NCBI GenBank assembly: GCA_946965045.2 | Contig: OX337229.1 | Location: 2,480,001 to 2,544,000 of the forward strand | Reading direction: 5' to 3' | Length of the DNA stretch: 64,000 nt | DNA from: Epithemia pelagica | Taxonomy: Eukaryota > Protista > Bacillariophyta | In this document: positions 23,836 through 50,514 of the stretch, piece by piece | Numbering within the stretch: the first letter of the stretch is position 1 | Layout of the letters: every line of letters begins with the position of its first letter | Translations under genes and position numbers: made by a program | The notes under the pieces: generated by a model | Databases searched by the model: none | Told to the model about the DNA's origin: nothing | The model's input: the letters and a program-made list of their open reading frames with translations, nothing else

Positions 23836-25219
23836 GGTTTCCAGACAAGATTCGAAACACTCGTTTTCAACAAGAAAGAAGAAACGATTTTATGACACAG
23901 CTTTGTAGAAAACACGTCGAGCTTTGGATCTCTCTCTCTCTCTGTGCTCAACTGTCGTCGTCGAATTGGATACAAGATACAATCAACAGAGAGATAGACG
24001 CGCAGTCTGTGCAGGAATCAGGAATCTCTCCCCAAACAGAGCGAAAAAAGAAAGATCAAAGATCCAGTCCCGGTCGGACGTAAGGTACTCTTCATTTCTA
24101 TAGTGATATCTTCCTTTCCCACTTCAACTTGTGGAGCCATGTCATCAGTCGCACTTTGCGCGTCGTCCATCCTTTCTTCGATCTTCGATCGTTCTACCGA
24201 GAACGACTCGTCGACCGATCGTCTCACAAAATCCAAAATCATACCATCCTTCTCCATCTCCCCGTGTTCCAAAAGGATCATCATCGGAACAGAAGGAAAA
24301 CCCAAGAACGTTCCTGAGATCATCGCAGAGAGAAGGAGTCCTTGCGTGCGTATTGCGTATGTGCGTGCGTACGAACGTCACGTGGCCTAGTTTGCCCCTT
24401 CTACCTAATAGCAGTAGTCGGTTGGTCCCAGAGCATGGGATCTGGAAACGCGTTCTGGGCACAACTCTTGTGTGTGGCCAAGTCATTGGGCCTTGTTTCA
24501 AATAACCCACGATCCCTATTGGATTGTTGGAGGTCCTGATGGTGGTACTCATGAGTCGTGAAAACCAGTAATGTATGTAACGTAAAACTATGACAACACT
24601 GGAACAAAAAAAGGTTGATGGACACCATCTTTCCAACAACCGAGACCTGTCGAGATTGCCATGGTGTTGTTGTGCGGCCACCACGGCCACTCGTTGTGGC
24701 AGGAGGAGTAGAAGTGGAATACTCTCAAGAGTCCAGCATCTCTGGACGGACCAATTGTGTCGAGTCACCCAACCATCCTGCTGTTGTGGACTCTTTTAAC
24801 CCAACGTGCCGGTAGGACTGGAATCAGGTTGTCACCAATGCCATGGCACTGGGCGAGGTCGTCCAATGGCCCGGCGAAGCTGTGGTCGTGATAGTGGTGT
24901 GATTCACTTGCAGCCAATTCCTGCCACCCATGCTCTCCAAAAGACACATTGAGATTATTGGTTCGTGTGCAGTGGCTCCAGAATTGGCATTCAAGACAAG
25001 GACGAGGAAGCGAGCTGTGGGGGTGTACCATCGGGAGTGGCCCCATTCCGTACTACACAAGGTCATTCTGGGCACTGTCTGTGACTGCGCTACCTTGTAA
25101 GTAGTAGAACACTTCTCTCTAGAGACTGGCAGTTTGCCCAAGTTGGGTGCTCTTTCTACTAAAGAGTTGTTGATATCCTCTTATCATTGTTTCCAAGTCC
25201 CAATCATCATGGGAGTTGT
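22497..25219. repeat. Segmental duplication, copy 1 (copy 2 = 28979-31723)
   Basis: Near-identical sequence at an offset of ~6.5 kb, covering the ACSBG 5' half and the intergenic region. Confidence 0.95.
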
Positions 25220-25417
25220 ATCCCATTATTTGAATCTCAAGATATTTGGTTCCCCCAAAAGTGCGATCCGAAGCCAGGACAGACAGACTGGAGCAACACG
25301 TGTCATCCAAAGATCGTCTTGTTCACATAAAAACCTAAAACATCAGCAGTTGGACAAGTGCCGTTGGAAATGACTCTCTCATGATCCGCGCGTTTTCATT
25401 TCATTCTCATCATCATC

Positions 25418-26818: not shown

Positions 26819-27026
26819 AAGACAGACAAACATGTATACAGTGGTATATTGGGGGTGTCCCACATGTTTCGACCAACACAAGAAGTATAAATTGGAAATC
26901 GACAATGAATTGTCATGACTGTGACCTCCTAGAATGCACCAAATTCCTACATCCAGTAATCTTCTTTCTAGGTTCTTTTTGCTCGTCTCCCAGACTAGAA
27001 ATCGCGTTGTTCCACAGTCGGTCGCA

Positions 27027-31723: not shown

Positions 31724-31744
31724 TCGTCTAAGTTCAGTATGAAC
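31724..31744 (+). other. Left terminus: TIR plus hairpin GTTCA-GTA-TGAAC
   Basis: TCGTCTAAGTTCAGTAT matches the reverse complement of 48634-48650; stem 31732-31736/31740-31744. Confidence 0.8.
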
Positions 31745-32159
31745 GTGATGGGTAGGCCGAAGGCTTTGGGGTCTGGGGTGGAACTTCCCAGAATGACCAG
31801 CTGTTCTGTCAACGGATGCAGAATAGCAGAAGCAGTACAAATGAGAGAAAAGGAGCGTTGTTGAAACCGTTAAATATATGCAGCTACGAATAGTTTAATG
31901 GTGAGTCATGGTATGATTTTGGGGTGCACCGTCAACCGCGTAATCTGTGAGTATGGTATTTCCCAAGCATATCTTTGGTATTAATGTAATACTCCCAACC
32001 ATCTGTTTATGACTGAAACAGGACTTTTACATTGAATGCTTGTTTGGGGCGTTATATTTTCGGTATCGGGCCTGCGTTCTCTCCTGTCACGTTCGTGGAG
32101 AGTGTTCTGTGCCATGCTTCCCATAACCATTCGTCGTCAGGTGGAAGCAGAACGAACAT

Positions 32160-32194
32160 GGGGAGTGGGGAGTGGGGAGTGGGGAGTGGGGAGT
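32160..32194 (+). repeat. (GGGGAGT)5 G-rich tandem repeat
   Basis: Five GGGG tracts separated by AGT. Confidence 0.9.
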
Positions 32195-32249
32195 TCATGC
32201 CTTGAAACTGCTCCCAAACAATCACCAACGTAGAACAGCCACATCAGGG

Positions 32250-33660
32250 CTGGCCTATCGAGAACAGGTTATCATGTCCCTACATAACGTATCGTCATAA
32301 GACACGAGCAACAAGAAGAATACCATGTTTGTTTGAGTGATTGTCGATCGATTGGGATTCCCGAACGAAGAGAGAGAGAGCATGTTTGTTCGAGGGATTG
32401 TCGATCGATTGGGATTCCCGAACGAAGAGAGAGAGCATGTTTGTTCGAGGGATTGTCGATTGATTGGGATTCACGAACGAAGAGAGAGAGAGGAACCAAG
32501 AATTCTCATGTGCAGAAGCGCAGTCGTTCAAAGGAGGTTTTCTTGAGACAGGTTATCATTTCCCTACATAAGCTGGCCACCCAACAAACGACGCCAGTAG
32601 CGTATCGGCATACGACACGAGCGACAAGAAGAATACCATGTTTGTTCGAGGGATTGTCGATCGATTGGGAAACCATTGGCGAATGCGGTTTGCTTTTCAC
32701 CATACGGCCCATGGTGTTTTCAAACCAAATGGCGCCCAACAAAATGGTCGCCAGTAAAACGGCATAAGACACGAGCAACAAGAAGAATACCATGTTTGTT
32801 CGAGTGATTATCGATCGATTGGGATTCACGAACGAAGAAATAGATAGAGAGAGAGAGGAACCAAGGATTCTTGGTGGAATTGGACATTCTCATGTGCAGA
32901 AGCGCAGTCGTTCAAAGGAGGTTTTCTTGAGACAGATATTATGGGTATCATCGAGAACTGGTTATCATTTCCCTACCTAAGCAAGACACGAGCAACAAGA
33001 AGAATACCATGTTTGTTCGAGGGATGGTCGATCGATTTGGAAACCATTTCAACACCACCTTCTTGAGGGACCAGAAGTCTTCCGCATGCGGTTTACTTTT
33101 CACCATACGGCCCATGGTGTTTTGAAACTAAATGACGCCCAACTAACGGTCGCAAGTAAAACCCAACAAACGGTCGCCAGTAAAACCCTGGACGTCATGA
33201 TGGCCGTCGGCATCTCGTGAATGACATCAAACATGGTGGCGGGCGTAAACATGTATTCGGTCACACCGTGCAGGGCACTCCCACCAGATTTGTCCTAGGC
33301 GGCCAAAATCCCTTGACCAGGGACCTTAATTTTGGTAACACACAAGGGAGCTGACGAAGACCCATCAACAAGTCTCTCAAGTTTGGAAGGAGATTGTGGA
33401 ATTGTGTGATGAGAGCTTGAATACCCCCGGCATTGGCCTCCTTGTCACATCTTGGTTCGAACAATACCACACTTGGCCGCGCGCGTCAATAATTTTCCCA
33501 ATTGTGGTATTAGGTTGATGAGTTGGACACCACTGTCCCTTGTCCCATTTCAAAAAGGGCACCACCTTCTTGAGGGACCGCAAGTACTCCGCATTCGACT
33601 TTCTTTACACCACATGGCCCATGGTGTTTTCAAACCAAATGGCGCCCAACAAACGTTAAC
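32250..33660. repeat. Modular repeat patchwork in the Helitron 5' arm
   Basis: 55-57-bp tandem units at 32324, 32381 and 32436; module AGACACGAGCAACAAGAAGAATACCATG at ~32296, 32609, 32763 and 32982; module CCCATGGTGTTTT at three sites. Confidence 0.85.
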
Positions 33661-34040
33661 ATGTATTTTCGATCACAGAGTTCCTTCCTTCGACAGTCAT
33701 GATTGCTGATGGCAATGATCGAGGGGAATATTCTTCAATTGCAAATTTTGGTGATTCCGATTTTTTTTCAAGTTCTGTTGTTGCGCGGCCAAGGCCAAAT
33801 GGAGAGCGTGTACGACTTTGTTGCTCGCACTGGGTCGTCAAGAGAAGACGGACAAAATTGTTTACTCGTCGGATGTTTCTGTTCTCGCAGTAATGTATGT
33901 TTTGCCGACACTGATTGTCGTCCTAAGTAGCCATCAATGCGGCTAACAACTCTATTTTTCGGATATATAACTACTAGAGCAACAAGTAGGGATAACGTGA
34001 ATAGAAACAAATCTACTATAGATATAATCTAAGTGATCTA

Positions 34041-34574
34041 CTAATCTTCCTTGTTTCCGTCAACAGCAGAGTCTTCAACTTCCTTCTGGTTATCGTTCTT
34101 GTTACCAGTTTCTTCATTGCTGGTGTCGCGAATTTCCGATTCATCCATCTCACCAAAGGAAGAATCAAAAGATTCTTCGTCTTCTTCTGACCAGTACCAG
34201 AGGTGGCGGGACAAAGCCTCCTGGTCAACTTTCATCATCACAAGCTCAAGCGTGATGGCGTTATCAATCACATCACTATCCTCGTTGAAGACGTACGAGT
34301 TCTTCGGGATCAGCTTGGAATTATCGATACGGCGAAGATGTGCAAGGTCTGTAAACACACCCAAGAAGTTTTTTACCTGGTTCACGACGTGACCAGCAGT
34401 CGTATGTTTTTTAATAACGTCAAGTTTCACTCGCAAACAGTCACTGACCAAGACATAACAACCAACGAATTGATGAGGACAGTGAGCCACAAGTGTTTTC
34501 ATCCGAAATGGTGAAGTCCCCATGGTGGGCATATTACCAGGGTGATGGATGAATCCAGGACGCTTCGACAACAT
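34041..34574 (-). CDS. Helitron accessory ORF: possible ubiquitin-like (beta-grasp) domain plus acidic tail
   Basis: Open frame with globular-looking CYVLVSD..RVKLDVIKKHTTAGHVVNQVKNFLGV..LRRIDNSKLI..TLELVMM followed by a D/E-rich tail. The start codon (34574, 34532 or 34502) is uncertain. Confidence 0.45.
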   Translation of the reverse strand: MLSKRPGFIHHPGNMPTMGTSPFRMKTLVAHCPHQFVGCYVLVSDCLRVKLDVIKKHTTAGHVVNQVKNFLGVFTDLAHLRRIDNSKLIPKNSYVFNEDSDVIDNAITLELVMMKVDQEALSRHLWYWSEEDEESFDSSFGEMDESEIRDTSNEETGNKNDNQKEVEDSAVDGNKED

Positions 34575-34663
34575 GATAAAAGCCAATTTGCACAAATATG
34601 ACACCCATGATCTGCACCTGTGATGACGTGTACAGATGACTTCGTCACCACCTGCCAAACCCT

Positions 34664-34795
34664 GGTTGAACCCAAATCCTGATGATGCCCCCGATCTGTC
34701 TGGTGGTTGAACCCAATCTGTGTGGTTGAACCCAAATCCATCTGGTCGAGCACCAATCCCTTGTTGGACCCAGTCCCTGGTTGAACCACAATCCA
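34664..34795. repeat. Iterated palindromic GGTTGAACC motif between divergent ORFs
   Basis: Perfect copies at 34664, 34705, 34724 and 34779; degenerate copies at ~34744 and ~34763. Confidence 0.8.
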
Positions 34796-34840
34796 ACCCA
34801 CAATCCCTGCGCAACAATCAACTGATGTTCCATATTCATC

Positions 34841-35710
34841 ATGCCCCCAACGAAGAAGGTAAGTGGTGATTTTTGTTTCTTATACTTCATTGAGGCATTT
34901 TCATCTAAGTTTGATTGTTGTTTGTGCAAGAAGTTCAAGTTTGCTACCGCCAAGAAGAAGGGAGTTGCTCCCTCTCCCGGTTGTAACAAGACCAAGGTAA
35001 CCGAGGTCCATTCCGAACGTTGTGGTCCGAATGGACAGTTTATTGTTGCATACATGCAACTTGCTGGGACCACGAAGCCCCGATCAGGCTTCATGGAGCC
35101 TGTGTTTGAGTTGATAAAGGACAAGGAGTCGCAGCTTTTCGATGAGTTTGATATCAGAATCGAGAAACTCTATCGTCGTGTTTCCCGTGACAATGATAAC
35201 ACCATGTTGAATGGAAACCCCGACAAGAATGGTCGGGAGTACAACTGGTCGGTTGTCGTAGGATTTTGTGAGGATGCCGAAAACGAGCTTCAGAAAGATC
35301 AAATGATGAAGAAGATGTGTGAGACGATGGTCAGGGTGATGGCTGCGGAGGACAAGAAAAATGGGTTTCTACGCACTTCCAAGACCAATGAAGCAGGACT
35401 TGTGCACTCCAAGAGTCCCCCTCGATCGTTGGACGAAGTCTTACCAAATGAGAATGTCGCCATGATTGTTAAGAATTATTTTCCACTTGAAAAGTGCCAG
35501 GACCTATACGAGTTCTTGGGTGGTGAGGAGGAAGGTGTGGCCGATTTGGTGTTCTCACGTGACCGCTACGACATGTTCGCGAAATGCGCGGTGGACAAGT
35601 GGGGATACCCCAAGGGTGTGCGTGAAAAGCAGGATGCCTCTCAGGATCAGGAGGAGTGTAGATCAGAGGTTGACGAATCCAAAATTGGCGACGAACCCAA
35701 TGACGAATGA
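34841..35710 (+). CDS. Helitron accessory protein of unknown function (probable 72-nt in-frame intron 34859-34930)
   Basis: 289-codon ORF directly upstream of and co-oriented with RepHel; AAG|GTAAGT donor after MPPTKK; basic N-terminus and acidic C-terminus. Confidence 0.6.
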   Translation: MPPTKKVSGDFCFLYFIEAFSSKFDCCLCKKFKFATAKKKGVAPSPGCNKTKVTEVHSERCGPNGQFIVAYMQLAGTTKPRSGFMEPVFELIKDKESQLFDEFDIRIEKLYRRVSRDNDNTMLNGNPDKNGREYNWSVVVGFCEDAENELQKDQMMKKMCETMVRVMAAEDKKNGFLRTSKTNEAGLVHSKSPPRSLDEVLPNENVAMIVKNYFPLEKCQDLYEFLGGEEEGVADLVFSRDRYDMFAKCAVDKWGYPKGVREKQDASQDQEECRSEVDESKIGDEPNDE

Positions 35711-35941
35711 AAATGGGCCCAAGGAGAATACAAACAGACATAACGGTTGCGACAAAATTAGTAGTAATAACACTTTGGCTGACGAGCCGACGAGCCCCAT
35801 GTTAGCGAGTAAGCGAAGTTGTCTACTTTCTACTTTCTACTTTCTACTTTGCGTCGACCAAATTATGCAAATCTTACTGCCACAAAATTTATATGCAGCT
35901 GCTTGGTAACACTCAGTGTTTCCATAGCAGGCCTAGCTAGC

Positions 35942-38900
35942 ATGTATGTTAGAGACTCTTCCATTGAGAAAGGGGTTGCTAAAGCAGCAGCATGCCGTGA
36001 CTCCCTATTGTATAAAGACGGAGACAAGTTTTTTCCAAAAGTGTGTTGTGTTTGCGACCAGTTCATCAAGGTTGGACATGAGAAATGTTTGAAACTAGAA
36101 GATCTAAAGCACAGACGAATTCAACCCAAGTTTCTGAAGGCAAATCTGGATTTCACCCATTGCAGCATCTCAGAAGACAGCAAGAAAATAATCAAGGGGC
36201 ATTACACACAAAGTTGTTATAATGCAAGAAACACTGCACGATATTGCTTTCTGCAGCAACTTGTTCTTTCCCCATCTTCATATGCATTGAAAAAGGGGCA
36301 GAAAAGTGAAGGACTGGGATGTTGTAGCATTTGTTACAATACTATTATTCAAATGAAGAAAGAATCATGTGATCCTGACAAGGTACCCAAATATGCCATA
36401 TTTAATGGATTGATGTTTGGTCCCACACCTGCCCGTTTGCAAGATTTGAATGAAGTTGAGCTGGCTTTGATTTCACCTGCAAGAACAAACAAACATATCT
36501 TTTCGTTTACCGCAGGGTCACATAAATCTATCAAGGGGTGGCATGCGTTGTACTACAATGACCTAAATGCAGTAAATGGAGTGATTAATTGGTGTCGTAC
36601 AGCAACAGGGCAGAATTCAACTAATGATAATGACGCGCAAAATGGGCAGGAACTCCCTGTACACTGGGCTGAAACTGCATTGTTTGATGAAGAAAGTATT
36701 GGTGATGATAATGACAGCAATGAAGATATCGAAAGTACGGCCAACAACTCCACTACAAATACATCTGAGGGGAACACCGGCAATGACGGCGAAGAAGAAA
36801 CTGAGCATCATGACGATGAAGACATTCAAGAAGATCCACAGGATTCTCCATTACTACCACAAATTGCTGTCATTCTAACAGGACCATTCACACCCAGACA
36901 GAAAGCTCTGACATACCAGCGTACAAAGGTTCGTTGGAATAAGGTCCATATGGCATTGCAATGGCTGAAGGACAACAATCATTTATACAAAGACTTAAAT
37001 TTGCCGGACGACAAAATCATTGAGCCAATAATTATTGACAAAAGTGAGGACATTGATGAAACAGCTTCATCAAATGTGGAACAAGTCTTTGAAATAACAG
37101 CTGTTTTCCCAGACTCCAATGAACCACAGTTAATCAATGGCGGCTGTTCATCACAAAATGATTTCAAGCAGTTAACACTTGATTGTCTTTTGGCTGACCA
37201 CGAGAAAAAGGATGCAACTTTGATTTCGCGTTCATCAAAAACATTATTGAAAGACTATCAGGGCGAAAATCTTCTTAAGGCTTTTCCGCTTCAGTTCCCA
37301 TTTGGTATTGGTGCATACGACAATCAAGGTCAACCACATTCTGGCATGAAATATTTTGAATATCTCATGAGACATTGAACTAAAAATTTCCATCGTGCCA
37401 ATTTTGTGTGCATTATTCACAACATGTTTGAGCGACAGAGAATGGTGTCAAACTCTTATTTGAGAACCAGTGAAGCACAGGCAGAATCATTTGCAACAAT
37501 CACAGATAAGCAGATTGAGGAAGCTATACAACGACATCTTGATTCCGCACAAGGATCAGCTCCAAGTGACAATTTTTTGAAAAAGATGAAAGCAATTACT
37601 TCATCAATGGGACACACAGGTGCTGCTGCAAAGAAAGCACGGCAGAATATGTTGGCAATGATTGCAAAATTTGGCCTGCCGAGTGTCATGTTTACCATTA
37701 CACCTGAGGATGCAGTGAATTTCAGAATACGTGTTATGGCAACCAAAAAAACTGGTGAAAGGAATCCTCCTGATCCAAACACAACACCGGTTCATGACCA
37801 ACACGAATATATACTTGAGTGTGGTGGAATTCGGCAAGTTCATCCAGGGCTTTGTGCCATTGAGTTTGAAAATGTGATAGCAATTACTATTCAGCATCTA
37901 CTTGGTTGGGATATGAACAAGAGGAAAAACATAAAAGATCTTGGAATTTTTGGTGATCTGTTAGCGTGGTGTTATGCAGTTGAGGAACAAGGCAGGAAAA
38001 CACTTCATGCACATTTCCTGTTGTATCTGATGAAATGGTCTGTGCTACTTCAAGGACTTGGAGATGAGGCAACAAGAGAACGGTTCTCGGAACAATTGGT
38101 TGAATATGCATCAAAAGTTATGAGCACATACATGCATGGTGAAGCCATTCCTTCCTGTGTTCAACAAGATTGTACTTCAAATGTTTTCGAATTCTGCTCA
38201 AAACAAGACATCAGGAATTTGCGCACAAAACTTGGAACTACATCACTTGGTGGGAAAGCGATTGCCAAGTGCACAACATGTAACACATGTATGACAAGTG
38301 AGGATTTGGTTTTCTCCCGATTGAAGGAAATCTTCCAAACAATGACTTTTACTCAAGAGCAAAGAGAAAATGAAACCAATGCTGAGTCAGATTTGTCTGA
38401 CAAAACAAAACTCACCAATGCCATGGAGTTACTCTTAATGCGGGAACAGCTCAAGAAGCCTTCCCGGATGACAAGCAAAGGCGTATTTGTCATGAACGTA
38501 TTGCGCAATCTGCATCGTTCAAAACATGCAAATTCCTGCTTCAAGAAAGGAGAAGAATGTCGCATGCATGTTCCATGTGCGTCATGTGACGAAACAGAAT
38601 TAAAATTTTCAGCAGACACGACTGATTGGTTTGACTGGAAAGGAAAGGAGCAGTCAAGACAATTGTTCACCTTGAACTCTAAACAGGCCCATGCTGATGC
38701 ATTTGTCAATATTCACAGTTCCCACGCAAGCAAGCTATTTGGTTGCAATACAAATGTTGTCACTGGAGTGGACGGAGGAAGTGTCATGTATATGACATGC
38801 TACATTTCAAAGAACACACAAACAGAAGACAATGAACTTTTTACAAATTCTGCAAAACATATGATCAAAAAAATGAGAGAGTCCTTACTCCAACTTGAGG

Positions 38901-41782
38901 ACGAGTCTTCGAACACAAATCAAGAGCAAGGAGGAGAAGACAATGAGAACAACAGAGTGGCTACAGTGATGAAAACATTGATTGGTGCAATGTTGCTTTC
39001 CACCTCTGCTCATATATGCAGTGCTCCTATGGCATCTTTTTTGGTGAGAAATGGAGGTTCACGTTTTCATTATTCTCATGATTTTGCATATGTCAATTTG
39101 AACCATTTTGAAACAGATGGTCTGAATGATTTGTCTGTTGATTCCATTGAGGGGACACCTTTTTTGACTTCAAGTGTCGCAAACTACTTATTGCGTCAAG
39201 AAGAACTAGAAGGCACTTGTTTGTATGATTTTTTGTCCCAGTTCACAGTGAGCAGAAGAACAAAAAGCAGTCTGGAATGGATAAAGGACCATCCATCAAA
39301 AAATCATCTTGGTGTGCAGGCTAGCAAACACATCAAGGTTCCTGTGGTCAATTACAGAGATTTCATGAACACCAGTTCTTTTGGAAACCAACCGATTGAT
39401 TCTTTTCAACTACCCGAAATTCTCGAGGAGGAGCATCATGCTATGGAACTTTATGCCAAGAAGGCAAACTTACTGTTTCATCCCTTTCGTTCAGTTCAAA
39501 CGGATTTGACCGTTGCAGGCTCATATGTTAGAAGTTTCCAGGAGGCACTTTGCAGTGGAATTATAACAGAAGCACATTGTGAGATTCTTGCAAATATTCA
39601 GGATTGTCGCAATAGTTTGGAAGCTGGGCGACCGTGTGATTCTCTTGAGTCTGAAACATCATGCCCGTCAGCTGCTTGTGGCCATGGGTCTTATAATGAG
39701 AACAATGCTGAAGAAACCAATCACGATGACATTGACAGTGCATTTGAAGAATTGGTTGAAACAATGAATGAACTAAATGACTCAGGACTTCAGTTGAGAA
39801 CGTCGAACAACATTTATCAGTTTTCCTCATCAATCATCCGAAAATGTGGCTCTGCAAAATGTGGTGTGCAAAACATTGCGACTCCCAATCTTGGAGAACG
39901 TGTGGGTGCAAACGTTTTTGAAACACAAAGCGAGGAAATGGATCCAGATCAACAGCATCCAAGTGGTCTAGACGATGATGATTTCATTTCTCGTTATTCA
40001 ACTTTTGTGACAAAGAAAGCACTTTATGAGCTAGCAATATCAAGAACAGAAAGGATTACCATGGATGATGGACACTACGAAATAAAAGCAACTGGAACAT
40101 TGAAGAATATCTGAGAATATGCTGTTCATCACTTCAGAGGTGATGAAGACCAGGAATATGCATTCGAGGCCATAATGTCTGCATTTGTACTTCGCCTCCA
40201 CGATGAAGCAGCAAAAGACACGACTGGACAAGAACAAATGCCTGCATTCCGTAGAAGAAAAATGAATCACATAAGAGAGACTTTGCAGAAGGTTAATCAA
40301 GGATCCCAGTTCATATCCTTTCTTTCTGGAGCAGGTGGATCTGGGAAAAGCCATGTCATCAAAACACTTGTGAGATATGCCAAAAATCTCTGTTCTAACC
40401 TCAAGGTCAGGTATGACAAACGTACAATTGTTGTTATAGCCCTTACTGGTGCAGCAGCTGTTGGAATCAATGGTGAAACGACACATATGGCTTGTGCATT
40501 AAACAGGGAAGTTACCAAGGAACCAGAAGAATGGAAGAATGCTTATCTCTTGATTGTAGATGAAATTTCTTTTGCATCAAGAGATGTTGTTGATAAACTG
40601 GATTACAAATTGAGACGCATTTTGAAGCCAGATCACAAATTTGGGGGGATTCCAATTGTCTTCGCTGGAGATTTTACGCAGCTCAAACCAGTGAAAGCTC
40701 AGCCCTTGTATTTATTCAAAGACTTTGAAAAATGGTATGAATGGGTCCATACTTTTCTTGAGCTAAGAACAAACCACAGGTTTCATTTGGATCCACCTTG
40801 GGGTAACTTACTTTCAATATTCCGGGATGAAGGGCCAAGTGACAGAGACGTTCAGAAGATTAACACTCGGGTTGTTGGTTCAAGAGGCGGACCAACAGAA
40901 AGTGATATACCCCCAAATGTGGTATATGCAACAAAAACCAACCTTGATTGCGCTGCCATCAATGATGCTATTTTTGGGAAACATCTCGAAAACACCCATT
41001 CAAAAGATCCAACTGTACAACCACCACTACACACAGTCTGTATAAAAGCCTCCAATTTGAAGTGGAGGAAAGCTGGGACACGTTCTGAATACATCAATTT
41101 TAACAAGTCGTGTGAAGATATCCTCTATGCAACATGTGGAGAAGGACATCTACAAGGAAAAGACAACAAAAGATATGACCCTCTGCTGAAACTGTACTAT
41201 GGAAGACCATTGTGCATCAATGAGAATAAAAAAGTTGATTCATGTATTGCAAATGGAGCAATGTGTGAATTCAAGGGACTTGTTCTCAAACAAGGTGTTA
41301 TGATGAATGACATGGAAAAAATAATGATTGATGGGTTCTATGTTTGGAGTATAAAGGTCTCCCAACTTGAAGGACTAAAAGTGGAGATGTTGGATGGTGG
41401 ACGTAACCAACTCGTCATTCTAAAACCAGCAACTGTCTGTCAACAAGAACAGTTTCCATTGCCACTGCTTAACATGACAAGAGTTCGGAAAATGATGAAG
41501 ATGACCCAGCTTCCTGTGAACGTGTCAAACGCAAGAACCGTCCATAAACTGCAAGGACGGTCAATTGAGTTCCTCTACATATCGAACTGGGATGACACTG
41601 GAAACTGGAACTATGTTTGCTTATCAAGAGTTTGTGAAATGAAGGGCCTCTTTCTAGCAAAACCTTTGATTGCAGAAAAGTGTCGCAGGATGTCAGCGGA
41701 ATGTCAAGAATTCCATGTCTGCTTTAGAACTACGAAGCATCCACCACCGAGGGTTCATATAGATGACAGACATAGCTCTTAG
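35942..41782 (+). pseudogene. RepHel transposase (DUF6570-like region, HUH Rep, PIF1 helicase) interrupted by two in-frame TGA codons
   Basis: One continuous frame across three track ORFs, with TGA at 37376-37378 and 40112-40114. Rep motifs FGLPSVMFTITP, VEEQGRKTLHAHFLLY, YMTCYISK. Helicase motifs GAGGSGKS, IVDEIS, FAGDFTQLKPV, LRTNHRF, TVHKLQGRS, YVCLSRV. No C-terminal endonuclease. Confidence 0.93.
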
Positions 41783-41832
41783 AAAATAGAAGCCATCATA
41801 TACCTGTATTCGGATGTGGGATAGCTTATACA

Positions 41833-44800
41833 GTGGGCTATAAGTGACACCATTTGCACATTCCAAAACCTGTGGATACTAGAGTTGTTCTCACGCGAAA
41901 CAAATGGCGACAAATCTTGTAGTACAATAGCCTCAAGTCAAACAGGAACAAGTATACCATCAAAGTTGCCGAACCCAAATTGCATTGCATCATCAGATAC
42001 CTTATGGCGTGGACTATAAGTGACAACAGTTTGACATTCCAAAACATGTGGATAATAGAGTTGTTCTCACGCGAAACAAATGGCGAAAAATCTTATAGTA
42101 CAATAGCCTCAAGTCGAACAAGAACAAGTATACCATCAAAGTTGCCGCACCCAAATTGCATTGCATTATTAGATACCTTATGGCGTAAACTATAAGTGAC
42201 AACAGTTTCACATTCCAAAACCTTTGGATACTAGAGTTGTTCTCACGCGAAACAAATGGCGACAATTCTTATAGTACAATAGCCTCAAGTCGAACAGGAA
42301 CAAGTATACCATCAAAGTTGCCACACACAAATTGCATTGCATCATCAGCTACCTTATGGCGTGGACTATAAGTGACAACAGTTTCACATTCCAAAACATG
42401 TGGATACTAGAGTTGTTCTCACGCGAAACAAATGGCGACAAATCTTAAAGTACTATAGCCTCAAGTCAAACAGGAACAAGTATACCATCAAAGTTGCCGC
42501 ACCCAAATTGCATTGCATCATCAGCTACCTTACGCGAAACAAATAGCGACAAATCTTATAGTACAATAGCCTCAAGTCGAACAGGAACAAGTATACCATC
42601 AAAGTTGCCGAACCCAAATTGCATTGCATCATCAGATACCCTATCGCGTGGACTATAAGTGACAACAGTTATACATTCCAAAACCTGTGGATACTACAGT
42701 TATCCTCACGCGAAACAAATGGCGACAAATCTTATAGTACAATAGCCTCAAGTCGAACAGGAACAAGTATACCATCAAAGTTGCCGCACCCAAATTGCAT
42801 TGCATCCTCAGATACCCTATCGCGTGGACAATAAGTGACAACAGTTTCACATTCCAAAACCTGTGGATACTAGAGTTGTTCTCACGGGAAACAAATGGCG
42901 ACAAATCATCTAGTACAATAGCCTCAAGTTGAACAGGAACAAGTATACCATCAAAGTTACCGAACCCAAATTGCATTGCATTATTAGATACCTTATGGCG
43001 TGGACTATAAGTGACATCAGTTTCACATTCCAAAACCTGTGGATACTAGAGTTGTTCTCACGCGAAACAAATGGCGACAAATCTTATAGTACAATAGCCT
43101 CAAGTCGAACAGGAACAAGTATACCATCAAAGTTGCCGCACCCAAATTGCATTCCATGATTAGATACCTTATGGCGTGGACTATAAGTGACAACAGTTTG
43201 AAATTCCAAAACCTGTGGATACTAGAGTTGTTCTCACGCGAAACAAATGGCGACAAATCATGAAGTACAATAGCCTCAAGTTGAACAGGAACAAGTATAC
43301 CATCAAAGTTGCCGCACCCAAATTGCATTGCATTATCAGCTACCTAATTACGTGGACTATAAGTGACATCAGTTTGACATTCCAAACCTGTGGATACTAG
43401 AGTTGTTCTCACGGGAAACAAATGGCGACAAATCTTATAGTACAATAGCCTCAAGTCGAACAGGAACAAGTATACCATCAAAGTTGCCGCACCCAAATTG
43501 CATTGCATCATTAGATACCTTATGGCGTGGACTATAAGTGACAACAGTTTCACATTCCAAAACCTGTGGATACAAGAGTTGTTTTCACGCGAAACAAATG
43601 GCGACAAATCTTGTAGTACAATAGCCTTAAGTCGAACAGGAACAAGTTTACCATTAAAGTAGCCACACCCAAATTTCATTGCATTATGAGATACCTTATG
43701 ACGTGGACTATAAATGAGAACAGATTCACATTCCAAAACCTGTGGATACTAGAGTTGTTCTCACGCGAAACAAATGGCGACAAATCATGTAGTGCAATAG
43801 CCTTAAGTCGAACAGGAACAAGTATACCATCAAAGTTCCCACACCCAAATTGCATTGCATTATAAGCTACTTTATGGCGTGGACTTTAAGTGACAGCAGT
43901 TTCACATTCCAAAACCTGTGGATACTAGAGTTGTTCTCACGCAAAACAAATGGCGACAAATCTTATAGTGCAATAGCCTCAAGTCGAACAGGACAAGTAT
44001 ACCATCAAAGTTGCCACACCCAAATTGCATTGTATGATCAGCTATCTTATAGCGTGGACTATAAGTCACATCAGTTTCACATTCCAAAACCTGTGGATAC
44101 TAGAGTTGTTCTCACGCGAAACAAATGGCGACAAATCTTATAGTACAATAGCCTCAAATCGAACAGGAACAAGTATACCATCAAAGTTGCCGAACCCAAA
44201 TTGCATTGCACCATCAGATACCTTATGGCGTGGACTATAAGTGACAACAGTTTCACATTCCAAAACCTGTGGATACAAGAGTTGTTCTCCCGCGAAACAA
44301 ATGGGGACAATTCTTATAGTACAATAGCCTCAAGTCGAACAGGAACAAGTAAACCATCAAAGTTGCCGCACCCAAATTGAATTGCATAATAAGATACCTT
44401 ATGTCGTGGACTATAAGTGACAACAGTTTCACATTCCAAAACCTTTGGATACTAGAGTTATTCTCACGCGAAACAAATGGCGACAAATCTTGTAGTACAA
44501 TAGCCTCAAGTCGAACAGGAACAAGTATACCATCAAAGTTGCCGCACCCAAATTGAATTGCATCATTAGATACCTTATGGCGTGGACTATAAGTGACAAC
44601 AGTTTGACATTCCAAAACCTGTGGATACTAGAGTTGTTCTCACGCGAAACAAATGGCAACAAATCTTATAGTACAATAGCCTCAAGTCAAACAGGAACAA
44701 GTATACCATCAAAGTTGCCGCACCCAAATTAAATTTCATCATCAGATACCTTATGGCGTGGACTATAAGTGACAACAGTTTCACATTCCAAAACCTGTGG

Positions 44801-47800
44801 ATACTAGAGTTATTCTCACGCGAAACAAATGGCGACAAATCTTATAGTACAATAGCCTCAAGTCAAACAGGAACAAGTATACCATCAAAGTTGCCGCACC
44901 CAAATTGCATTGCATCATCAGCTACCTTATGGCGTGGACTATAAGTGACAACAGTTTGACATTCCAAAACCTGTGGATACTAGAGTTGTTCTCACGCGAA
45001 ACAATTGGAGACAAATCATGTAGTACAATAGCTCAAGTGGAACAGGAACAAGTATACCATCAAAGTTGCCAAACCCAAATTGCATTGCATTATCAGCTAC
45101 CTAATGGCGTGGACAATAAGTGACAACAGTTTCACATTCCAAAACCTTTGGATACTAGAGTTGTTCTCACGCGAAACAAATGGCGACAAATCATGAAGTA
45201 CAATAGCCTCAAGTTGAACAGGAACAAGTATACCATCAAAGTTGCCGCACCTAAATTGCATTCCATGATTAGATACCTTATGGCGTGGACTATAAGTGAC
45301 AACAGTTTCACATTCCAAAACCTGTGGATACTAGAGTTGTTCTCACGCGAAACAAATGGCGACAAATCTTATAGTACAATAGCCTCAAGTCGAACAGGAA
45401 CAAGTATACCATCAAAGTTGCCGAACCCAAATTGCATTGCATCATCAGCTTCCTTATGGCGTGGACCATAAGTGAAATCAGTTTCACATTCCAAAACCTT
45501 TGGATACTAGAGTTGTTCTCACGCGAAACAAATGGCGACTAATCTTGTAGTACAATAGCCTCAAGTCGAACAGGAACAAGTTTACCATCAAAGTTGCCGC
45601 AACCGAATTGCATTGCATCATCAGCTACCTTATGGCGTGGACTATAAGTGACATCAGTTTCACATTCCAAAACCTGTGGATACTAGAGTTGTTCTCACGG
45701 GAAACAAATGGCGACAAATCATCTAGTACAATAGCCTCAAGTTGAACAGGAACAAGTATACCATCAAAGTTGCCGCACCCAAATTGCATTGCATTATCAG
45801 ATACTTTATGGCGTGGACTATAAGTGACAACAGTTTCACATTCCAAAACCTTTGGATACTAGAGTTGTTCTCACGCGAAACAAATGGCGACAAATCATGA
45901 AGTACAATAGCCTCAAGTTGAACAGGAACAAGTATACCATCAAAGTTGCCGCACCCAAATTGCATTCCATGATTAGATACCTTATGGCGTGGACTATAAG
46001 TGACAACAGTTTCACATTCCAAAACCTGTGGATACTAGAGTTGTTCTCACGCGAAACAAATGGCGACAAATCTTATAGTGCAATAGCCTCAAGTTGAACA
46101 GGAACAAGTATACCATCAAAGTTGCCGCACCCAAATTGCATTGCATTATCAGATACTTTATGGCGTGGACTATAAGTGACAACAGTTTCACATTCCAAAA
46201 CCTGTGGATACTAGAGTTGTTCTCACGCGAAACAAATGGCGACAAATCTTGTAGTGCAATAGCCTCAAGTTGAACAGGAACAAGTATACCATCAAAGTTG
46301 CCACACCCAAATTGCATTGTATGATCAGCTACCTTATGGCGTGGACTATAAGTCACATCAGTTTCACATTCCAAAACCTGTGGATACTAGAGTTGTTCTC
46401 ACGCGAAACAAATGGCGACAAATCTTGTAGTGCAATAGCCTCAAGTTGAACAGGAACAAGTATACCATCAAAGTTGCCACACCCAAATTGCATTGTATGA
46501 TCAGCTACCTTATGGCGTGGACTATAAGTCACATCAGTTTCACATTCCAAAACCTGTGGATACTAGAGTTGTTCTCACGCGAAACAAATGGCGACTAATC
46601 TTGTAGTACAATAGCCTCAAGTCGAACAGGAACAAGTTTACCATCAAAGTTGCCGAACCCAAATTGCATTGCATCATCAGATATCGTATGGCGTGGACTA
46701 TAAGTGACATCAGTTTCACATTCCAAAACCTGTGGATACTAGAGTTGTTCTCACGGGAAACAAATGGCGACAAATCATCTAGTACAATAGCCTCAAAAAA
46801 CAGGAACAAGTATACCATCAAAGTTGCCGCACCCAAATTGCATTGCATTATCAGATACTTTATGGCGTGGACTATAAGTGACAACAGTTTCACATTCCAA
46901 AACCTTTGGATACTAGAGTTGTTCTCACGCGAAACAAATGGCGACAAATCATGAAGTACAATAGCCTCAAGTTGAACAGGAACAAGTATACCATCAAAGT
47001 TGCCGCACCCAAATTGCATTCCATGATTAGATACCTTATGGCGTGGACTATAAGTGACAACAGTTTCACATTCCAAAACCTGTGGATACTAGAGTTGTTC
47101 TCACGCGAAACAAATGGCGACAAATCATGAAGTACAATAGCCTCAAGTTGAACAGGAACAAGTATACCATCAAAGTTGCCGCACCCAAATTGCATTCCAT
47201 GATTAGATACCTTATGGCGTGGACCATAAGTGAAATCAGTTTCACATTCCAAAACCTGTGGATACTAGAGTTGTTCTCACGGGAAACAAATGGCGACAAA
47301 TCTTATAGTACAATAGCCTCAAGTCGAACAGGAACAAGTATACCATCAAAGTTGCCGAACCCAAATTGCATTGCATCATCAGCTTCCTTATGGCGTGGAC
47401 CATAAGTGAAATCAGTTTCACATTCCAAAACCTTTGGATACTAGAGTTGTTCTCACGCGAAACAAATGGCGACTAATCTTGTAGTACAATAGCCTCAAGT
47501 CGAACAGGAACAAGTTTACCATCAAAGTTGCCGCAACCGAATTGCATTGCATCATCAGCTACCTTATGGCGTGGACTATAAGTGACATCAGTTTCACATT
47601 CCAAAACCTGTGGATACTAGAGTTGTTCTCACGGGAAACAAATGGCGACAAATCATCTAGTACAATAGCCTCAAGTTGAACAGGAACAAGTATACCATCA
47701 AAGTTGCCGCACCCAAATTGCATTGCATTATCAGATACTTTATGGCGTGGACTATAAGTGACAACAGTTTCACATTCCAAAACCTTTGGATACTAGAGTT

Positions 47801-48498
47801 GTTCTCACGCGAAACAAATGGCGACAAATCATGAAGTACAATAGCCTCAAGTTGAACAGGAACAAGTATACCATCAAAGTTGCCGCACCCAAATTGCATT
47901 CCATGATTAGATACCTTATGGCGTGGACTATAAGTGACAACAGTTTCACATTCCAAAACCTTTGGATACTAGAGTTGTTCTCACGCGAAACAAATGGCGA
48001 CAAATCTTATAGTGCAATAGCCTCAAGTTGAACAGGAACAAGTATACCATCAAAGTTGCCGCACCCAAATTGCATTGCATTATCAGATACTTTATGGCGT
48101 GGACTATAAGTGACAACAGTTTCACATTCCAAAACCTGTGGATACTAGAGTTGTTCTCACGCGAAACAAATGGCGACAAATCTTGTAGTGCAATAGCCTC
48201 AAGTTGAACAGGAACAAGTATACCATCAAAGTTGCCACACCCAAATTGCATTGTATGATCAGCTACCTTATGGCGTGGACTATAAGTCACATCAGTTTCA
48301 CATTCCAAAACCTGTGGATACTAGAGTTTTTTGCACGCGAAACAAATGGCGACTAATCTTGTAGTACAATAGCCTCAAGTCGAACGGAAACAAGTATACC
48401 ATCAAAGTTGCCGAACCCAAATTGCATTGCATCATCAGATATCGTATGGCGTGGAATATAAGTGACAACAGTTTCACATTCCGAAACCTGTGGATACT
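41833..48498. repeat. 176-bp tandem satellite, ~38 monomers, inside the Helitron 3' arm
   Basis: TAAGTGAC recurs at 41841, 42017, 42193 and 42369 (period 176). One monomer near 42530 lacks ~65 bp. Rare variants recur at an offset of 1934 bp. Confidence 0.98.
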
Positions 48499-48633
48499 TG
48501 AATTCCATAACTACTCCCAGGAGTACAGAGCAAGTTCAGCTAAACCGTCTCTCTTTATTCTCACTCCTAAGTAGTCTACATATTTCAGTACTTCTGGTTC
48601 GTTCAGTCACGGATTCCACTGCACAGATAAAAG

Positions 48634-48674
48634 ATACTGAACTTAGTCGACTCTTTACCGCGAAGCGGTCCAAT
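48634..48674 (+). other. Right terminus: subterminal TIR plus hairpin ACCGC-GAA-GCGGT
   Basis: ATACTGAACTTAGTCGA (48634-48650), hairpin at 48657-48669, then CCAAT and the host flank. Confidence 0.85.
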
Positions 48675-48880
48675 ATCCAATTATTTGAATCCCAAGATAT
48701 TTGGTTCCCCCATAAGTGCGATCCGAAGCCAGGACAGACAGACTGGAGCAACACGCGTCATTCAAAGATCGTATCGTTCACATAAAAACCTAAAACATCA
48801 GCAGTTGGACAAGTGCCGTTGGAAATCAATCACTCTCTCATGATCCGCGCGTTTTTCATTTCATTCTCATCATCATCATC

Positions 48881-50238
48881 ATGCTTCTGAAGTCTCGCTT
48901 TGTCCTGCTGCTTCTGGTACTAGGAGGGGAGGTTCCATCCTTGTCCTTGGCATTTTCGGCCTCGTCATCCTCCTCAGGTCTGGTTCGATCCATTCATTCA
49001 CCGGTGTTGGTTCAAATGACAACCTCTTCCTTCCAAGATTTGGATCCACAGCAAGAACAAGAACCTTTTGCACGACCAACATCAACGACCACCAAGAATC
49101 CGACACCGGTATTGCTTTCCGTCTGGAAGGACTTGACACAGTCCATCTCTTCGTCATCCTCTGTGTCTCTGCCATCGATCATGGCCACTCTCTGTTTGGC
49201 CGCTGCACTTTCCTTGACACTCTTGTCGTCTCCGGATCCGGCGTGGGCGATCGTATCGGGAAGTCGCATGGGTGCTCGCACCATGAGTCGTCCCGCACCC
49301 CGCGCCAGTTCTTATGGTGGTAGTCGTAGTCGAGGATCTTATGGTGGTGGTGGCTATCGGAGGAATGGTGTGACGATTGCGCCCGTTGTGCCCATTGTCC
49401 GGGGGCGATCCCATTCCCATCCAACGCCCATTGTCGCTGGACCGGAAGTCGCGACGCCCCTCTCACTGCGGGTACCCTCGGATGATGAGATCCTTCTCGG
49501 AGTCTTGGAATTTTTTTTATCTGGATCTGGGTCCCTCCTGTGCACCATGCCGTAAATCGTGCCGTATCCGGAGTTGGGACCTCCCTATCCGGAGTTTGGA
49601 CGACCTTGGATACCATGTTGTCGTCGTCGGCTTTGGGACGCGGTGTTACCGTCGCCCAACTCAGTGTCGCCTTGGAAATTCCCAATCGAGACGATGAGAA
49701 TTCCCTCTTGTCCATTTTGGATCGATTGGCCCAAACGGCTCGGACCGATTCTCGTGTGGGCCTTCAAAATTTGACCAGTCAAGTGGCCTTGGAACTCTTG
49801 AGACGCAAGGCTTCCATTGTTTCGGCGCATGCCGAATCCAAAAAGTTCATGTCGATCGAACCGGCGCAACGAAACTTTACTGTCCGCACGGTTCAAGAAC
49901 GAGCAAAATTTGAACAAGAAACGGCGATCAGTCAATATGGTGGTGTCATTTATTCCGGCGCGAGTTCGACCACTTCTTCTTCATCGAGTAGTAGTAGTAG
50001 CGATAAGGCGACAGTGGCAGTGGTGACCTTGGTCATTGCCATTGACGGCGATTCCACTACCTTGCCGGCCATTCGATCCATGGCGAACGTGGAACAAGCC
50101 TTGCAACGCATTGCCACGGATGCCAAGATTTCGGATTGTTTGCAAAGTGCCGAAATCTTGTGGACCCCTCAAGATCGATCGGAAACCTTGACCCTCCAAG
50201 ATGTCATTGCGGATTATCCCAAACTACGCACCGTCTAG
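48881..50238 (+). pseudogene. DUF1517 copy 3, full length but with a 1-nt frameshift in a T8 run (49511-49518); may be an assembly error
   Basis: Two overlapping ORFs; adding one T gives EFFFIWIWVPPVHHAVN, collinear with copy 2. Confidence 0.75.
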
Positions 50239-50514
50239 AAGACAGACAAACATATATACACACCGTAGATGCAGATTATTATTGGTGGGATCACATGTAC
50301 CACATAGGGTGTCCCACATGCTGCGACCAACACAAGAAGTATCAATTCAAATTCAAAACATGAAGTGTATCCACATCCATGACTGTGAACTCATAAAAAC
50401 CATTAAGGTCAAATGTGAATGCAGCAAATTCCTACATCCAGTAATGTTCTTGTAGGTTTCATTCGCTCCTCCCCCAGAATAGAAGTCCCGTTGTTCCACA
50501 GTCTGTAGCATCAT

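What the first reader, a model, noticed from the sequence alone, without database searches (positions are those of the whole stretch)
41833..48498. 6.7-kb nucleosome-length satellite inside a rolling-circle transposon
About 38 well-conserved 176-bp monomers begin ~50 bp after the RepHel stop and end ~135 bp before the right TIR, making up ~40% of the element. The length matches a nucleosome repeat and the size class of centromeric satellites. Helentron-borne arrays seeding satellites are known in Drosophila and bivalves, whereas characterised diatom centromeres are not satellite-based. The element may act as a satellite-dispersal vehicle, a chromatin-organising module or an array-derived small-RNA source.
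Basis: partly seen in the sequence, partly recalled or inferred. Interest (0 to 1): 0.75.

Follow-up and report, generated by a model that had tools for sequence, protein, structure and literature searches.

The report
Satellite array built into a Helitron
The 6.7-kb block of 176-bp repeats is real and is a built-in passenger of a rolling-circle (Helitron2-type) jumping gene of a diatom, which carried it to eight places where each array then grew or shrank. This transposon-borne kind of satellite is already known from animals, plants and ciliates, and nothing in the sequence points to a centromere role.

Summary
Window 41833-48498 holds about 38 head-to-tail 176-bp monomers at about 93% pairwise identity. 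The array starts 50 bp after the RepHel stop and ends 135 bp before the right inverted repeat.

The element is 31724-48674 (16,951 bp). Its ends are fixed base-exactly by an uninterrupted paralogous empty site in the same window. The array makes up 39% of it.

All ~246 monomers in the 60.5-Mb genome lie in eight loci. Each sits between the RepHel stop and the same 176-bp 3' tail, and starts and ends at the same monomer phase. Lengths run from 2 to ~100 monomers. Edge monomers are orthologous between copies. Interiors are locus-specific, with 352- and 370-bp dimer repeats and an 11-monomer-offset duplication in this window. A sister family with near-identical termini has no array.

The array is therefore a transposon-internal satellite that travels with the element and turns over locally by unequal exchange. 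The centromere and chromatin ideas found no sequence support. Arrays occur on only 5 of 23 contigs, contain no low-GC windows, show no 10-bp WW periodicity, and show only marginal unevenness of variation along the monomer. All five RepHel-bearing copies are broken.

The scan had already reached the same reading from two other copies in this genome (s1-238760, s1-238893). I class it as a new member of a known kind, of modest interest.

The parts
31724..48674 (+). Complete Helitron2-type element (16,951 bp), family A, window copy
   Evidence: Other copies match from 31723/31724 and up to 48674. With the element removed, window 22497-26038 aligns without a break to 28979-31723 plus 48675-49501 at 97.2% over 3,573 bp. 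Junctions were read.
31724..31740 (+). 5' terminal inverted repeat (17 nt, begins TCGTC), preceded by T in all copies
   Evidence: Pairs with 48634-48650 at 94% complementarity. The 5' flank ends in T in 8 of 8 junctions.
32257..33665 (+). 5' internal repeats (55-bp x3 plus dispersed 88-106-nt units)
35819..41782 (+). RepHel gene, one reading frame. The three domains are DUF6570 (35819-37378), Helitron_like_N (37406-40114) and PIF1 helicase (40175-41782). It is broken by two in-frame TGA codons at 37376-37378 and 40112-40114, both private to this copy.
   Evidence: Pfam E-values 6.7e-21, 3e-17 and 4.3e-22. Stops and their sense counterparts in other copies.
41809..41892 (+). Degenerate leading partial monomer (monomer phase ~93-176), orthologous in all five full-length copies
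   Evidence: Profile hit. Shared variants 108G, 115C, 116A, 121G, 134C, 137T.
41833..48498 (+). 176-bp tandem array, about 38 monomers, 40% GC, about 93% pairwise identity
42421..42532 (+). Single internally truncated monomer (111-113 bp)
45301..46398 (+). Block duplicated within the array. Its partner is 47235-48332, 1,934 bp (11 monomers) downstream, at 99.5% identity.
48329..48498 (+). Terminal monomer, cut at phase 170 in every copy. It carries the edge signature 27G, 99C, 108T, 110G, 122A, 149G, 168A shared with four other loci.
48499..48674 (+). Unique 176-bp 3' tail, 92-98% identical at all eight loci. It holds the subterminal inverted repeat (48634-48650), the hairpin with a 5-bp stem and GAA loop (48657-48669) and the terminal CCAAT (48670-48674).
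25219..25220 (+). Paralogous empty site: the same sequence without the element and with no target-site duplication

Best explanation
The array is a non-coding satellite that forms part of one Helitron2-type rolling-circle transposon family (family A) of this diatom. It occupies the only long non-coding stretch on the 3' side, between the RepHel stop and the 3' recognition module (subterminal inverted repeat plus hairpin).

Shown: the array was already present, with a library of monomer variants, in the common ancestor of all eight loci. It was copied to new sites with the element. It exists nowhere else in the genome.

Inferred: after each insertion the array evolved on the spot by out-of-register exchange, replication slippage and gene conversion. 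This produced locus-specific variants, dimer higher-order repeats, block duplications and lengths of 13 to ~100 monomers in full copies. The two edge monomers cannot take part in such exchange and so stayed orthologous.

The array arose after family A split from its array-less sister family B. I lean towards tandem amplification in place (roughly 60:40 over capture of a host satellite that has since been lost). I take it to be a tolerated passenger with no demonstrated function for either element or host.
For: Census. A conserved 22-mer with up to 2 mismatches hits 246 times (88 forward, 158 reverse; control 0). These counts equal the monomers of the eight loci found by BLAST.

Fixed position. 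Every array ends at monomer phase 170 and is followed by the same tail, 92-98% identical. All five full-length copies start at phase ~93-105, just after the RepHel stop.

Edge orthology. The first partial monomer and the last monomer carry shared diagnostic variants across loci.

Ancestral variant library. Element bodies are 98.5-98.9% identical (C10-C17 99.5%), while monomers are only about 93% identical. Of that monomer divergence, 3.0-3.8% comes from variants shared between arrays (2.5-5.0% if the two 2-5-monomer remnants are included). Singletons are only 0.07-0.4%.

Local turnover. A monomer's nearest neighbour lies in its own array in 81% of cases, against 28% in label shuffles (maximum 38% in 1,000). 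C2b has 352-bp dimers and C6 has 370-bp dimers containing a 194-bp variant. The window array has a 1.1-kb internal duplication at 99.5%. C10 and C17 differ by 0.5% in the body but hold 13 and 47 monomers.

Sister family. Family B (74-80% identity, at least 12 copies) has the same kind of termini, with 21 of 22 bases shared in the 5' repeat. It runs from the stop through about 100 bp to its 3' end with no array.

Precedent. Tandem repeats just upstream of the 3' module are described for animal Helentron derivatives (PMC4067079, PMC7492417; up to ~90 monomers per PMC10048060) and for ORF-bearing Paramecium Helitrons (PMC13085455).
Against: In-place turnover cannot be fully separated from differences between unsampled master copies, because each locus is an independent insertion.

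The retention of an array in every copy, and its recurrence at the same position in Helitron-like elements of animals, ciliates and now a diatom, could reflect a cis function rather than mere tolerance.

The whole region between stop and subterminal repeat is unrelated between families A and B. That fits capture as well as in-place birth.

No reads, expression, chromatin or methylation data were available.
Confidence: 0.85

Rival explanations
1. The array is a cis-acting module that benefits the element. Possible roles are a multi-site platform for RepHel or a host factor, a spacer or terminator protecting the 3' recognition module, or a trigger of heterochromatin or small RNA that tempers element activity.
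For: The array is present in all eight loci at an invariant position. Satellites sit immediately upstream of the 3' terminal module in animal Helentron derivatives and Paramecium Helitrons (PMC4067079, PMC7492417, PMC13085455). The first half of the monomer varies somewhat less than positions 97-144 (my chi-square across windows is about 23 on 14 df, which is marginal).
Against: Sister family B, with near-identical termini, has no array yet has more copies. Variant events per column are not over-dispersed (mean 1.19, variance 0.80), so no clearly conserved box stands out. No inverted-repeat-like or hairpin-like motif occurs in the monomer above shuffles (local alignment). The single-stranded fold is weaker than shuffles (z +1.1). 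Array length ranges freely from 13 to ~100 monomers.
Confidence: 0.07
2. The array has a host-level chromatin role, as a centromere or neocentromere seed, a boundary element, or a nucleosome-phasing block.
For: The 176-bp unit falls in the size class of centromeric satellites. Helitron-linked Tyba repeats form CENH3-bound holocentromere units in Rhynchospora (PMC10048060). The element is 6-7 points lower in GC than its surroundings.
Against: Arrays occur on only 5 of 23 contigs, with three separate sites (four arrays) on contig 2, and total about 43 kb, or 0.07% of the genome. None of 132 100-bp windows has GC at or below 32% (minimum 36%), unlike the repeat-free low-GC centromeres of Phaeodactylum (10.1101/096016). 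WW periodicity near 10 bp is not above shuffles (fraction of shuffles at or above the observed value 0.93). Two arrays are 2-5-monomer remnants, and one is split by nested transposons.
Confidence: 0.04
3. The satellite was a host satellite captured by the ancestor of family A, for example by reading through its 3' end, rather than born inside the element.
For: Everything between the stop codon and the last ~45 bp differs between families A and B. Helitron-like elements are known to capture flanking DNA, and capture was proposed for the Paramecium satellites (PMC13085455).
Against: No free-standing copy or single-copy progenitor of the monomer was found in the genome, and there was no hit in JGI metagenome contigs. 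The array grades into unique sequence through a degenerate partial monomer.
Confidence: 0.3
4. The array or its length is an assembly artefact.
For: No read data were available to me, so the exact monomer number in this window is unverified.
Against: Monomers carry distinct, ordered variant patterns. Eight loci in unique flanks share the same junction phases. One array contains two nested transposon insertions. The assembly has 23 contigs for 60.5 Mb, which points to long reads.
Confidence: 0.02

Closest known systems
Tandem-repeat-bearing non-autonomous Helentrons (DINE-1/HINE in Drosophila and mites; Pearl and Cg_HINE in bivalves)
   Same: They are rolling-circle elements with a 5' terminal or subterminal inverted repeat, a 3' subterminal inverted repeat and a 3' hairpin. 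They insert next to T without target-site duplication. A central array of mostly 140-180-bp monomers sits upstream of the 3' module, and monomer number varies between copies (PMC4067079, PMC7492417, PMC10048060).
   Different: Those carriers have no ORF, number in the thousands, and average at most ~5 monomers (longest 29 in PMC7492417; ~90 quoted in PMC10048060). They usually have an adjoining microsatellite, and their autonomous partners encode an endonuclease domain. Here five of eight loci still encode a (broken) RepHel with no endonuclease domain. The Rep motif lacks the Helentron signature. Full copies hold 13 to ~100 monomers, and there are only eight loci.
Paramecium aurelia Helitrons with satellites flanking the ORF (PMC13085455)
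   Same: They are ORF-containing Helitron-like elements of another SAR lineage. Satellites fill the non-coding parts, including a satellite 42-168 nt before the 3' terminal sequence. Repeat numbers expand and contract between copies, and ORF-less derivatives carry the same satellites.
   Different: They belong to a different Helitron clade. [quoted passage not shown] Here a single 176-bp satellite sits on the 3' side at interstitial sites.
Tyba satellite of Rhynchospora holocentromeres, partly linked to a Helitron (as summarised in PMC10048060)
   Same: It is a satellite whose dispersal is attributed to a Helitron, and its arrays (20-25 kb) are of similar size to those here.
   Different: Tyba is CENH3-bound, spread uniformly along all chromosomes and conserved across about 70 species. 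The diatom array is on 5 of 23 contigs and has no evidence of centromere function.
Characterised diatom centromeres (Phaeodactylum tricornutum; 10.1101/096016)
   Same: Nothing beyond a GC content below the local average.
   Different: Those centromeres are unique, repeat-free regions rich in 100-bp windows at or below 32% GC. The array has none.

Membership tests
Helitron2-type rolling-circle transposon (carrier element) | Single large protein with HUH Rep and PIF1-type helicase domains | tested here: met
   Helitron_like_N 3e-17 and PIF1 4.3e-22, with an N-terminal DUF6570 at 6.7e-21, all in one frame.
Helitron2-type rolling-circle transposon (carrier element) | Asymmetric inverted repeats: 5' terminal and 3' subterminal | tested here: met
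   31724-31740 pairs with 48634-48650, 16 of 17 complementary. The 3' arm lies 24 bp inside the end.
Helitron2-type rolling-circle transposon (carrier element) | Short hairpin between the 3' subterminal repeat and the end | tested here: met
   5-bp stem with a GAA loop at 48657-48669, also present in family B with compensating sequence.
Helitron2-type rolling-circle transposon (carrier element) | Insertion after T (T^T or T^C) without target-site duplication | tested here: met
   The empty site shows no duplication. The 5' flank is T in 8 of 8 junctions. Across the eight 3' junctions read, the flank base is T in five and C, A and G in one each. Two of the T junctions are secondary duplicates (C2s2 of C2s1; C13s of C17), leaving T x3, C, A, G among six independent junctions. 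The downstream base is therefore looser than the textbook rule.
Helentron (endonuclease-encoding relative) | C-terminal apurinic/apyrimidinic endonuclease domain and the Helentron signature in Rep motif 2 | tested here: not met
   No endonuclease family appears among the Pfam hits of the C-terminal ORF. Rep motif 2 reads E-E-Q-G-R-K-T-L-H-A-H and lacks the G-S-P form (criterion from PMC4067079).
Satellite DNA carried inside a transposon (satDNA-like tandem repeats) | Head-to-tail non-coding monomers, inside the element boundaries, in multiple copies of the element | tested here: met
   There is no Rfam match. 176 is not a multiple of 3, and only short alternating-frame ORFs occur.
Satellite DNA carried inside a transposon (satDNA-like tandem repeats) | Local homogenisation (concerted evolution) with less-homogenised edge monomers | tested here: met
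   Nearest neighbour in the same array 81% against 28% in shuffles. Edge signatures are shared across loci.
Classical (heterochromatic) satellite | Long free-standing arrays making up an appreciable share of the genome | tested here: not met
   The largest locus holds about 17.7 kb of monomers. The total is about 246 monomers or 43 kb (0.07%), and none lies outside the element.
Centromeric satellite | Presence at one site on every chromosome | tested here: not met
   Present on 5 of 23 contigs, with three separate sites (four arrays) on contig 2.
Centromeric satellite | Association with CENH3 nucleosomes | not testable with these tools
   No chromatin data. The surrogate tests (low-GC windows, WW periodicity) were negative.

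The most novel reading that the evidence does not exclude
The monomers are a working cis-module rather than a passenger: a phased-chromatin or small-RNA-generating block that silences or licenses the element, or that can recruit CENH3. A Helitron would then be distributing chromatin-organising DNA in a lineage whose known centromeres are repeat-free.
Probability: 0.06. Interest if true: 0.7.

Novelty: new member of a known kind. Interest (0 to 1): 0.3.

Why it matters
This extends the link between Helitron-like transposons and satellite DNA to diatoms. That link is documented in insects, bivalves, sedges and ciliates.

It is also an unusually clean case. There are eight loci with base-exact element ends. 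A sister family lacks the array. The census is complete and shows the satellite exists only inside the element.

This makes it a tidy natural system for measuring how fast an array turns over relative to point mutation: here 13 versus 47 monomers at 0.5% body divergence. It could also be used to test whether such arrays affect mobilisation.

It does not change what is known about diatom centromeres.

Tried and rejected
Monomer derived from the element's own termini: rejected. Local alignment of the 176-bp tail, family B's tail and the pre-array spacer against a monomer dimer is no better than shuffles. Ungapped matches of the 5' repeat, the 3' subterminal repeat and the last 40 nt are also no better than shuffles. 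A CGCGAA/GCG/AAT resemblance to the 3' hairpin that I saw by eye does not survive these tests.

Structured DNA or RNA: rejected. The monomer folds less well than shuffles (z +1.1) and there is no Rfam hit across the element.

Nucleosome-positioning signal: 10-bp WW power is below the shuffle mean.

Low-GC centromere criterion: no qualifying windows.

Excess monomer divergence from CpG decay: rejected. The frequent polymorphic sites are mostly transversions, and most are shared between arrays.

Environmental or other-species copies: the 22-mer scan of metagenome contigs found nothing.

Pfam on ORFs of the 11.9-kb insertion in the C2b array gave only a RING finger, so that insertion remains unclassified.
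Full report
OBSERVATION

Tandem Repeats Finder reports a 176-bp period over 41833-42532 (4.0 copies) and 42532-48498 (33.9 copies), with 92-93% matches and no indels. A conserved anchor recurs 38 times at spacings of 174-176 bp, apart from one 111-bp unit at 42421-42532. A profile built from the monomers finds 39 pieces: a degenerate 84-bp leading partial at 41809-41892, 36 full units, the truncated unit and a final unit cut at phase 170. GC is 40% across the array and the coding part of the element, against about 47-50% outside.

THE CARRIER

Three ORFs in a single frame carry DUF6570, Helitron_like_N and PIF1 helicase domains. They are 35819-37378, 37406-40114 and 40175-41782. Two TGA codons separate them. 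The other copies have sense codons at those positions.

Searching the flanks against the whole genome fixed the element ends (window = contig 2, 2,480,001-2,544,000; 60.5 Mb in 23 contigs). All other copies stop matching at 31723/31724 and at 48674. With the element removed, window 22497-26038 aligns without interruption to 28979-31723 plus 48675-49501 at 97.2% over 3,573 bp. This is a paralogous empty site with no target-site duplication.

The element is therefore 31724-48674 (16,951 bp). It begins with a 17-nt terminal inverted repeat. At the 3' side it has the partner repeat placed subterminally, then a 5-bp-stem hairpin (48657-48669) and a terminal CCAAT. The base before the 5' end is T in 8 of 8 junctions. 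The base after the 3' end is T in five of the eight junctions read, and C, A and G in one each. Two of those T junctions (C2s2 and C13s) are secondary duplicates of other loci.

No endonuclease domain was found, and Rep motif 2 lacks the Helentron signature given in PMC4067079. The element is Helitron2-type, not a Helentron.

GENOME-WIDE CENSUS

A two-monomer query finds arrays at eight loci.

| Locus | Monomers | Notes |
|---|---|---|
| This window (contig 2, 2.52 Mb) | 38 | |
| Contig 10 (C10) | 13.4 | |
| Contig 17 (C17) | 47.4 | |
| Contig 6 (C6) | 38.4 | 194-bp monomer variant forming 370-bp dimers |
| Contig 2, 6.05-6.10 Mb (C2b) | about 100 | About 17.7 kb of monomers in three blocks with 352-bp dimers, split by insertions of 11,858 and 5,375 bp |
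| Contig 2, 2.17 and 2.18 Mb (C2s1, C2s2) | 4.6 each | Twin remnants |
| Contig 13 (C13s) | 2.1 | Remnant |

A conserved 22-mer with up to two mismatches occurs 88 times forward and 158 times reverse, with zero control hits. These counts match the monomers of the eight loci, so no array of this satellite exists outside them. Every array is followed by the same 176-bp tail at 92-98% identity. In the five full-length copies it is preceded by the RepHel 3' end at 96-98%. All arrays end at monomer phase 170, and full copies start at phase ~93-105.

HOW THE ARRAYS EVOLVE

Over 6,244 ungapped non-array positions, the five full copies are 98.5-98.9% identical and form a star-like tree. The exception is C10-C17, at 99.5% with 22 shared derived sites. 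The window copy has 35 private substitutions, or 0.56%.

Monomers are only about 93% identical, both within and between arrays. Partitioning the variants resolves this apparent conflict. In the five full-length arrays, 3.0-3.8% of bases are variants shared between arrays (2.5-5.0% if the two 2-5-monomer remnants are included). Array-private variants account for 0-1.2% and singletons for 0.07-0.4%. The last two are in the range of the body's private divergence. The ancestral element therefore already carried an array holding a library of monomer variants.

The first partial monomer and the last monomer carry diagnostic variants shared across loci. This is the classical weakly homogenised edge.

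Interiors are locus-specific:
- A monomer's nearest neighbour lies in its own array in 81% of cases, against 28% in label shuffles, with a maximum of 38% in 1,000 shuffles.
- C6 and C2b have their own dimer repeats.
- The window array contains a 1.1-kb block (45301-46398) repeated 11 monomers downstream at 99.5%.
- C10 and C17, only 0.5% apart in the body, hold 13 and 47 monomers.
- C13s shares at least 597 bp of 3' flank with C17 (96.5% over 1,145 bp). It keeps the ancestral edge monomer, which C17 has since overwritten with interior variants.

Array turnover is thus much faster than point substitution. I infer that it proceeds by unequal exchange, slippage or conversion at each locus. I cannot fully exclude that part of the difference arose in unsampled master copies.

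ORIGIN

A sister family B shares the terminal architecture. It is 74-80% identical and has at least 12 copies. It shares 21 of 22 bases of the 5' repeat and has a homologous subterminal repeat and hairpin. In three copies examined, family B runs from the stop codon through about 100 bp to its 3' end with no tandem array. Between stop and subterminal repeat, the two families share no detectable similarity.

The array is therefore a family A acquisition. The choice between in-place amplification and capture remains open. The absence of any free or single-copy progenitor in the genome makes me lean towards in-place birth.

TESTS OF THE FUNCTIONAL IDEAS

- Distribution: arrays lie on 5 of 23 contigs, with three separate sites (four arrays) on contig 2. 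They total about 43 kb.
- Low GC: none of 132 100-bp windows in the array is at or below 32% GC (minimum 36%). Phaeodactylum centromeres are repeat-free regions rich in such windows (10.1101/096016).
- Nucleosome positioning: WW dinucleotide power near 10 bp is below the shuffle mean.
- Structure: the monomer has no single-strand structure (z +1.1) and no Rfam match.
- Terminal motifs: no motif resembling the terminal repeats or hairpin occurs above chance.
- Conserved boxes: variant events per column are not over-dispersed (mean 1.19, variance 0.80). Positions 97-144 vary somewhat more than the first half, but only marginally.

No sequence evidence supports a centromeric, nucleosome-phasing or protein-binding role. 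Chromatin and small-RNA roles remain untestable here.

STATE OF THE FAMILY

All five RepHel-bearing copies are broken, each differently:
- The window copy has two nonsense codons.
- C2b has a 4-bp deletion.
- C6 has a 1,910-bp deletion.
- C10 and C17 share a 1-bp deletion.

That shared lesion lies in two copies with different flanks on both sides. It implies that an already defective copy was mobilised in trans. Family B or another relative with near-identical termini is a plausible helper, though this is inference. The dispersal-vehicle role is therefore historical as far as this assembly shows.

COMPARISON WITH WHAT IS KNOWN

Tandem repeats placed just upstream of the 3' module are a described feature of Helentron-derived non-autonomous elements. 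Examples are DINE-1/HINE, Pearl and oyster Cg_HINE. Their monomers are mostly 140-180 bp. Arrays average at most five monomers, and up to ~90 are quoted (PMC4067079; PMC7492417; PMC10048060). ORF-bearing Helitrons whose non-coding parts are filled with satellites, including one 42-168 nt before the 3' terminal sequence, were reported for Paramecium (PMC13085455). Helitron-linked Tyba repeats form holocentromere units in Rhynchospora (PMC10048060).

In the held library I found no report of a Helitron-borne satellite in diatoms. The present case is a new member of a known kind. Its distinctive points are the host lineage, the RepHel-encoding carrier, the long arrays, the complete census and the array-less sister family.

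EARLIER NOTES OF THIS SCAN

Two follow-ups on other copies in this genome reached the same reading. They are s1-238760, at the C2b locus, and s1-238893. They read the satellite as a built-in part of a Helitron carried to several places, where each array then grew or shrank. A first-reader note on my own stretch (s1-230699) gave the same element ends. I tested these claims independently here and they hold.

LIMITS

The second assembly (P0001, 97%) and the Nitzschia relatives could therefore not be examined.

Noticed in passing
window 22497-26038 versus 28979-31723 plus 48675-49501: A ~6.5-kb local segmental duplication at 97.2% identity. One copy carries the Helitron and the other is the empty site. 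Further partial repeats of the same sequence lie at 26103-28967 and 48771-50260.
   Followed up: partly
window 37376-37378, 40112-40114; L031/L033-L034 (C10, C17) at the position equivalent to window 37925: All five RepHel-bearing copies are broken in different ways. C10 and C17, which have different flanks, share a 1-bp deletion, so an already defective copy was mobilised in trans. Family B has near-identical termini (21 of 22 in the 5' repeat) and could be the helper.
   Followed up: partly
L038:1245-6620 and L039-L040 (contig 2, 6.05-6.07 Mb): The largest array (C2b) is split by two nested insertions. One is a 5,375-bp LTR retrotransposon with two identical 753-bp LTRs, so it is very young. 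The other is an 11,858-bp element with ~15-bp inverted termini and a 940-aa ORF whose only Pfam hit is a RING finger.
   Followed up: partly
L043 and L044 (contig 2, 2,164,001-2,184,000): Two 4.6-monomer remnants plus tail lie 11,980 bp apart. They sit inside a direct duplication that is 99.9% identical over at least 4.6 kb. The array is cut at its 5' side by an LTR end of the same family as the retrotransposon in C2b.
   Followed up: partly
L045:3545-4688 versus L033-L034 (contig 13 versus contig 17): The 2-monomer remnant on contig 13 shares at least 597 bp of 3' flank with the contig 17 copy (96.5%). It is either a duplicated junction fragment or a read-through transduction from that copy. 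It preserves an older state of the terminal monomer.
   Followed up: partly
window 34841-35710 (+): A 289-aa ORF with an ATG start and no Pfam hit lies upstream of RepHel. It is open (268-294 aa) in four copies, although RepHel is broken in all of them. Earlier notes of this scan describe ubiquitin-like accessory genes in sister Helitron2 families. I did not test whether this ORF is one.
   Followed up: no
G000 contigs 5, 7, 8, 10, 11, 13, 16 (coordinates): A third Helitron2 family at 59% helicase identity has about eight copies with open frames of 1,291-1,983 aa and near-identical scores, so it may be active. A fourth family lies at about 34% identity. Neither was examined for satellites.
   Followed up: no
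window 6506-6804 and 12503-12801: 299-bp direct repeats, 100% identical and 6 kb apart. These are the LTRs of a very young retrotransposon.
   Followed up: no
G000:C11:2101829-2101879: An isolated 49-51-bp match (92%) to the middle of the 176-bp 3' tail (window ~48571-48619), with no element around it in the searches.
   Followed up: no
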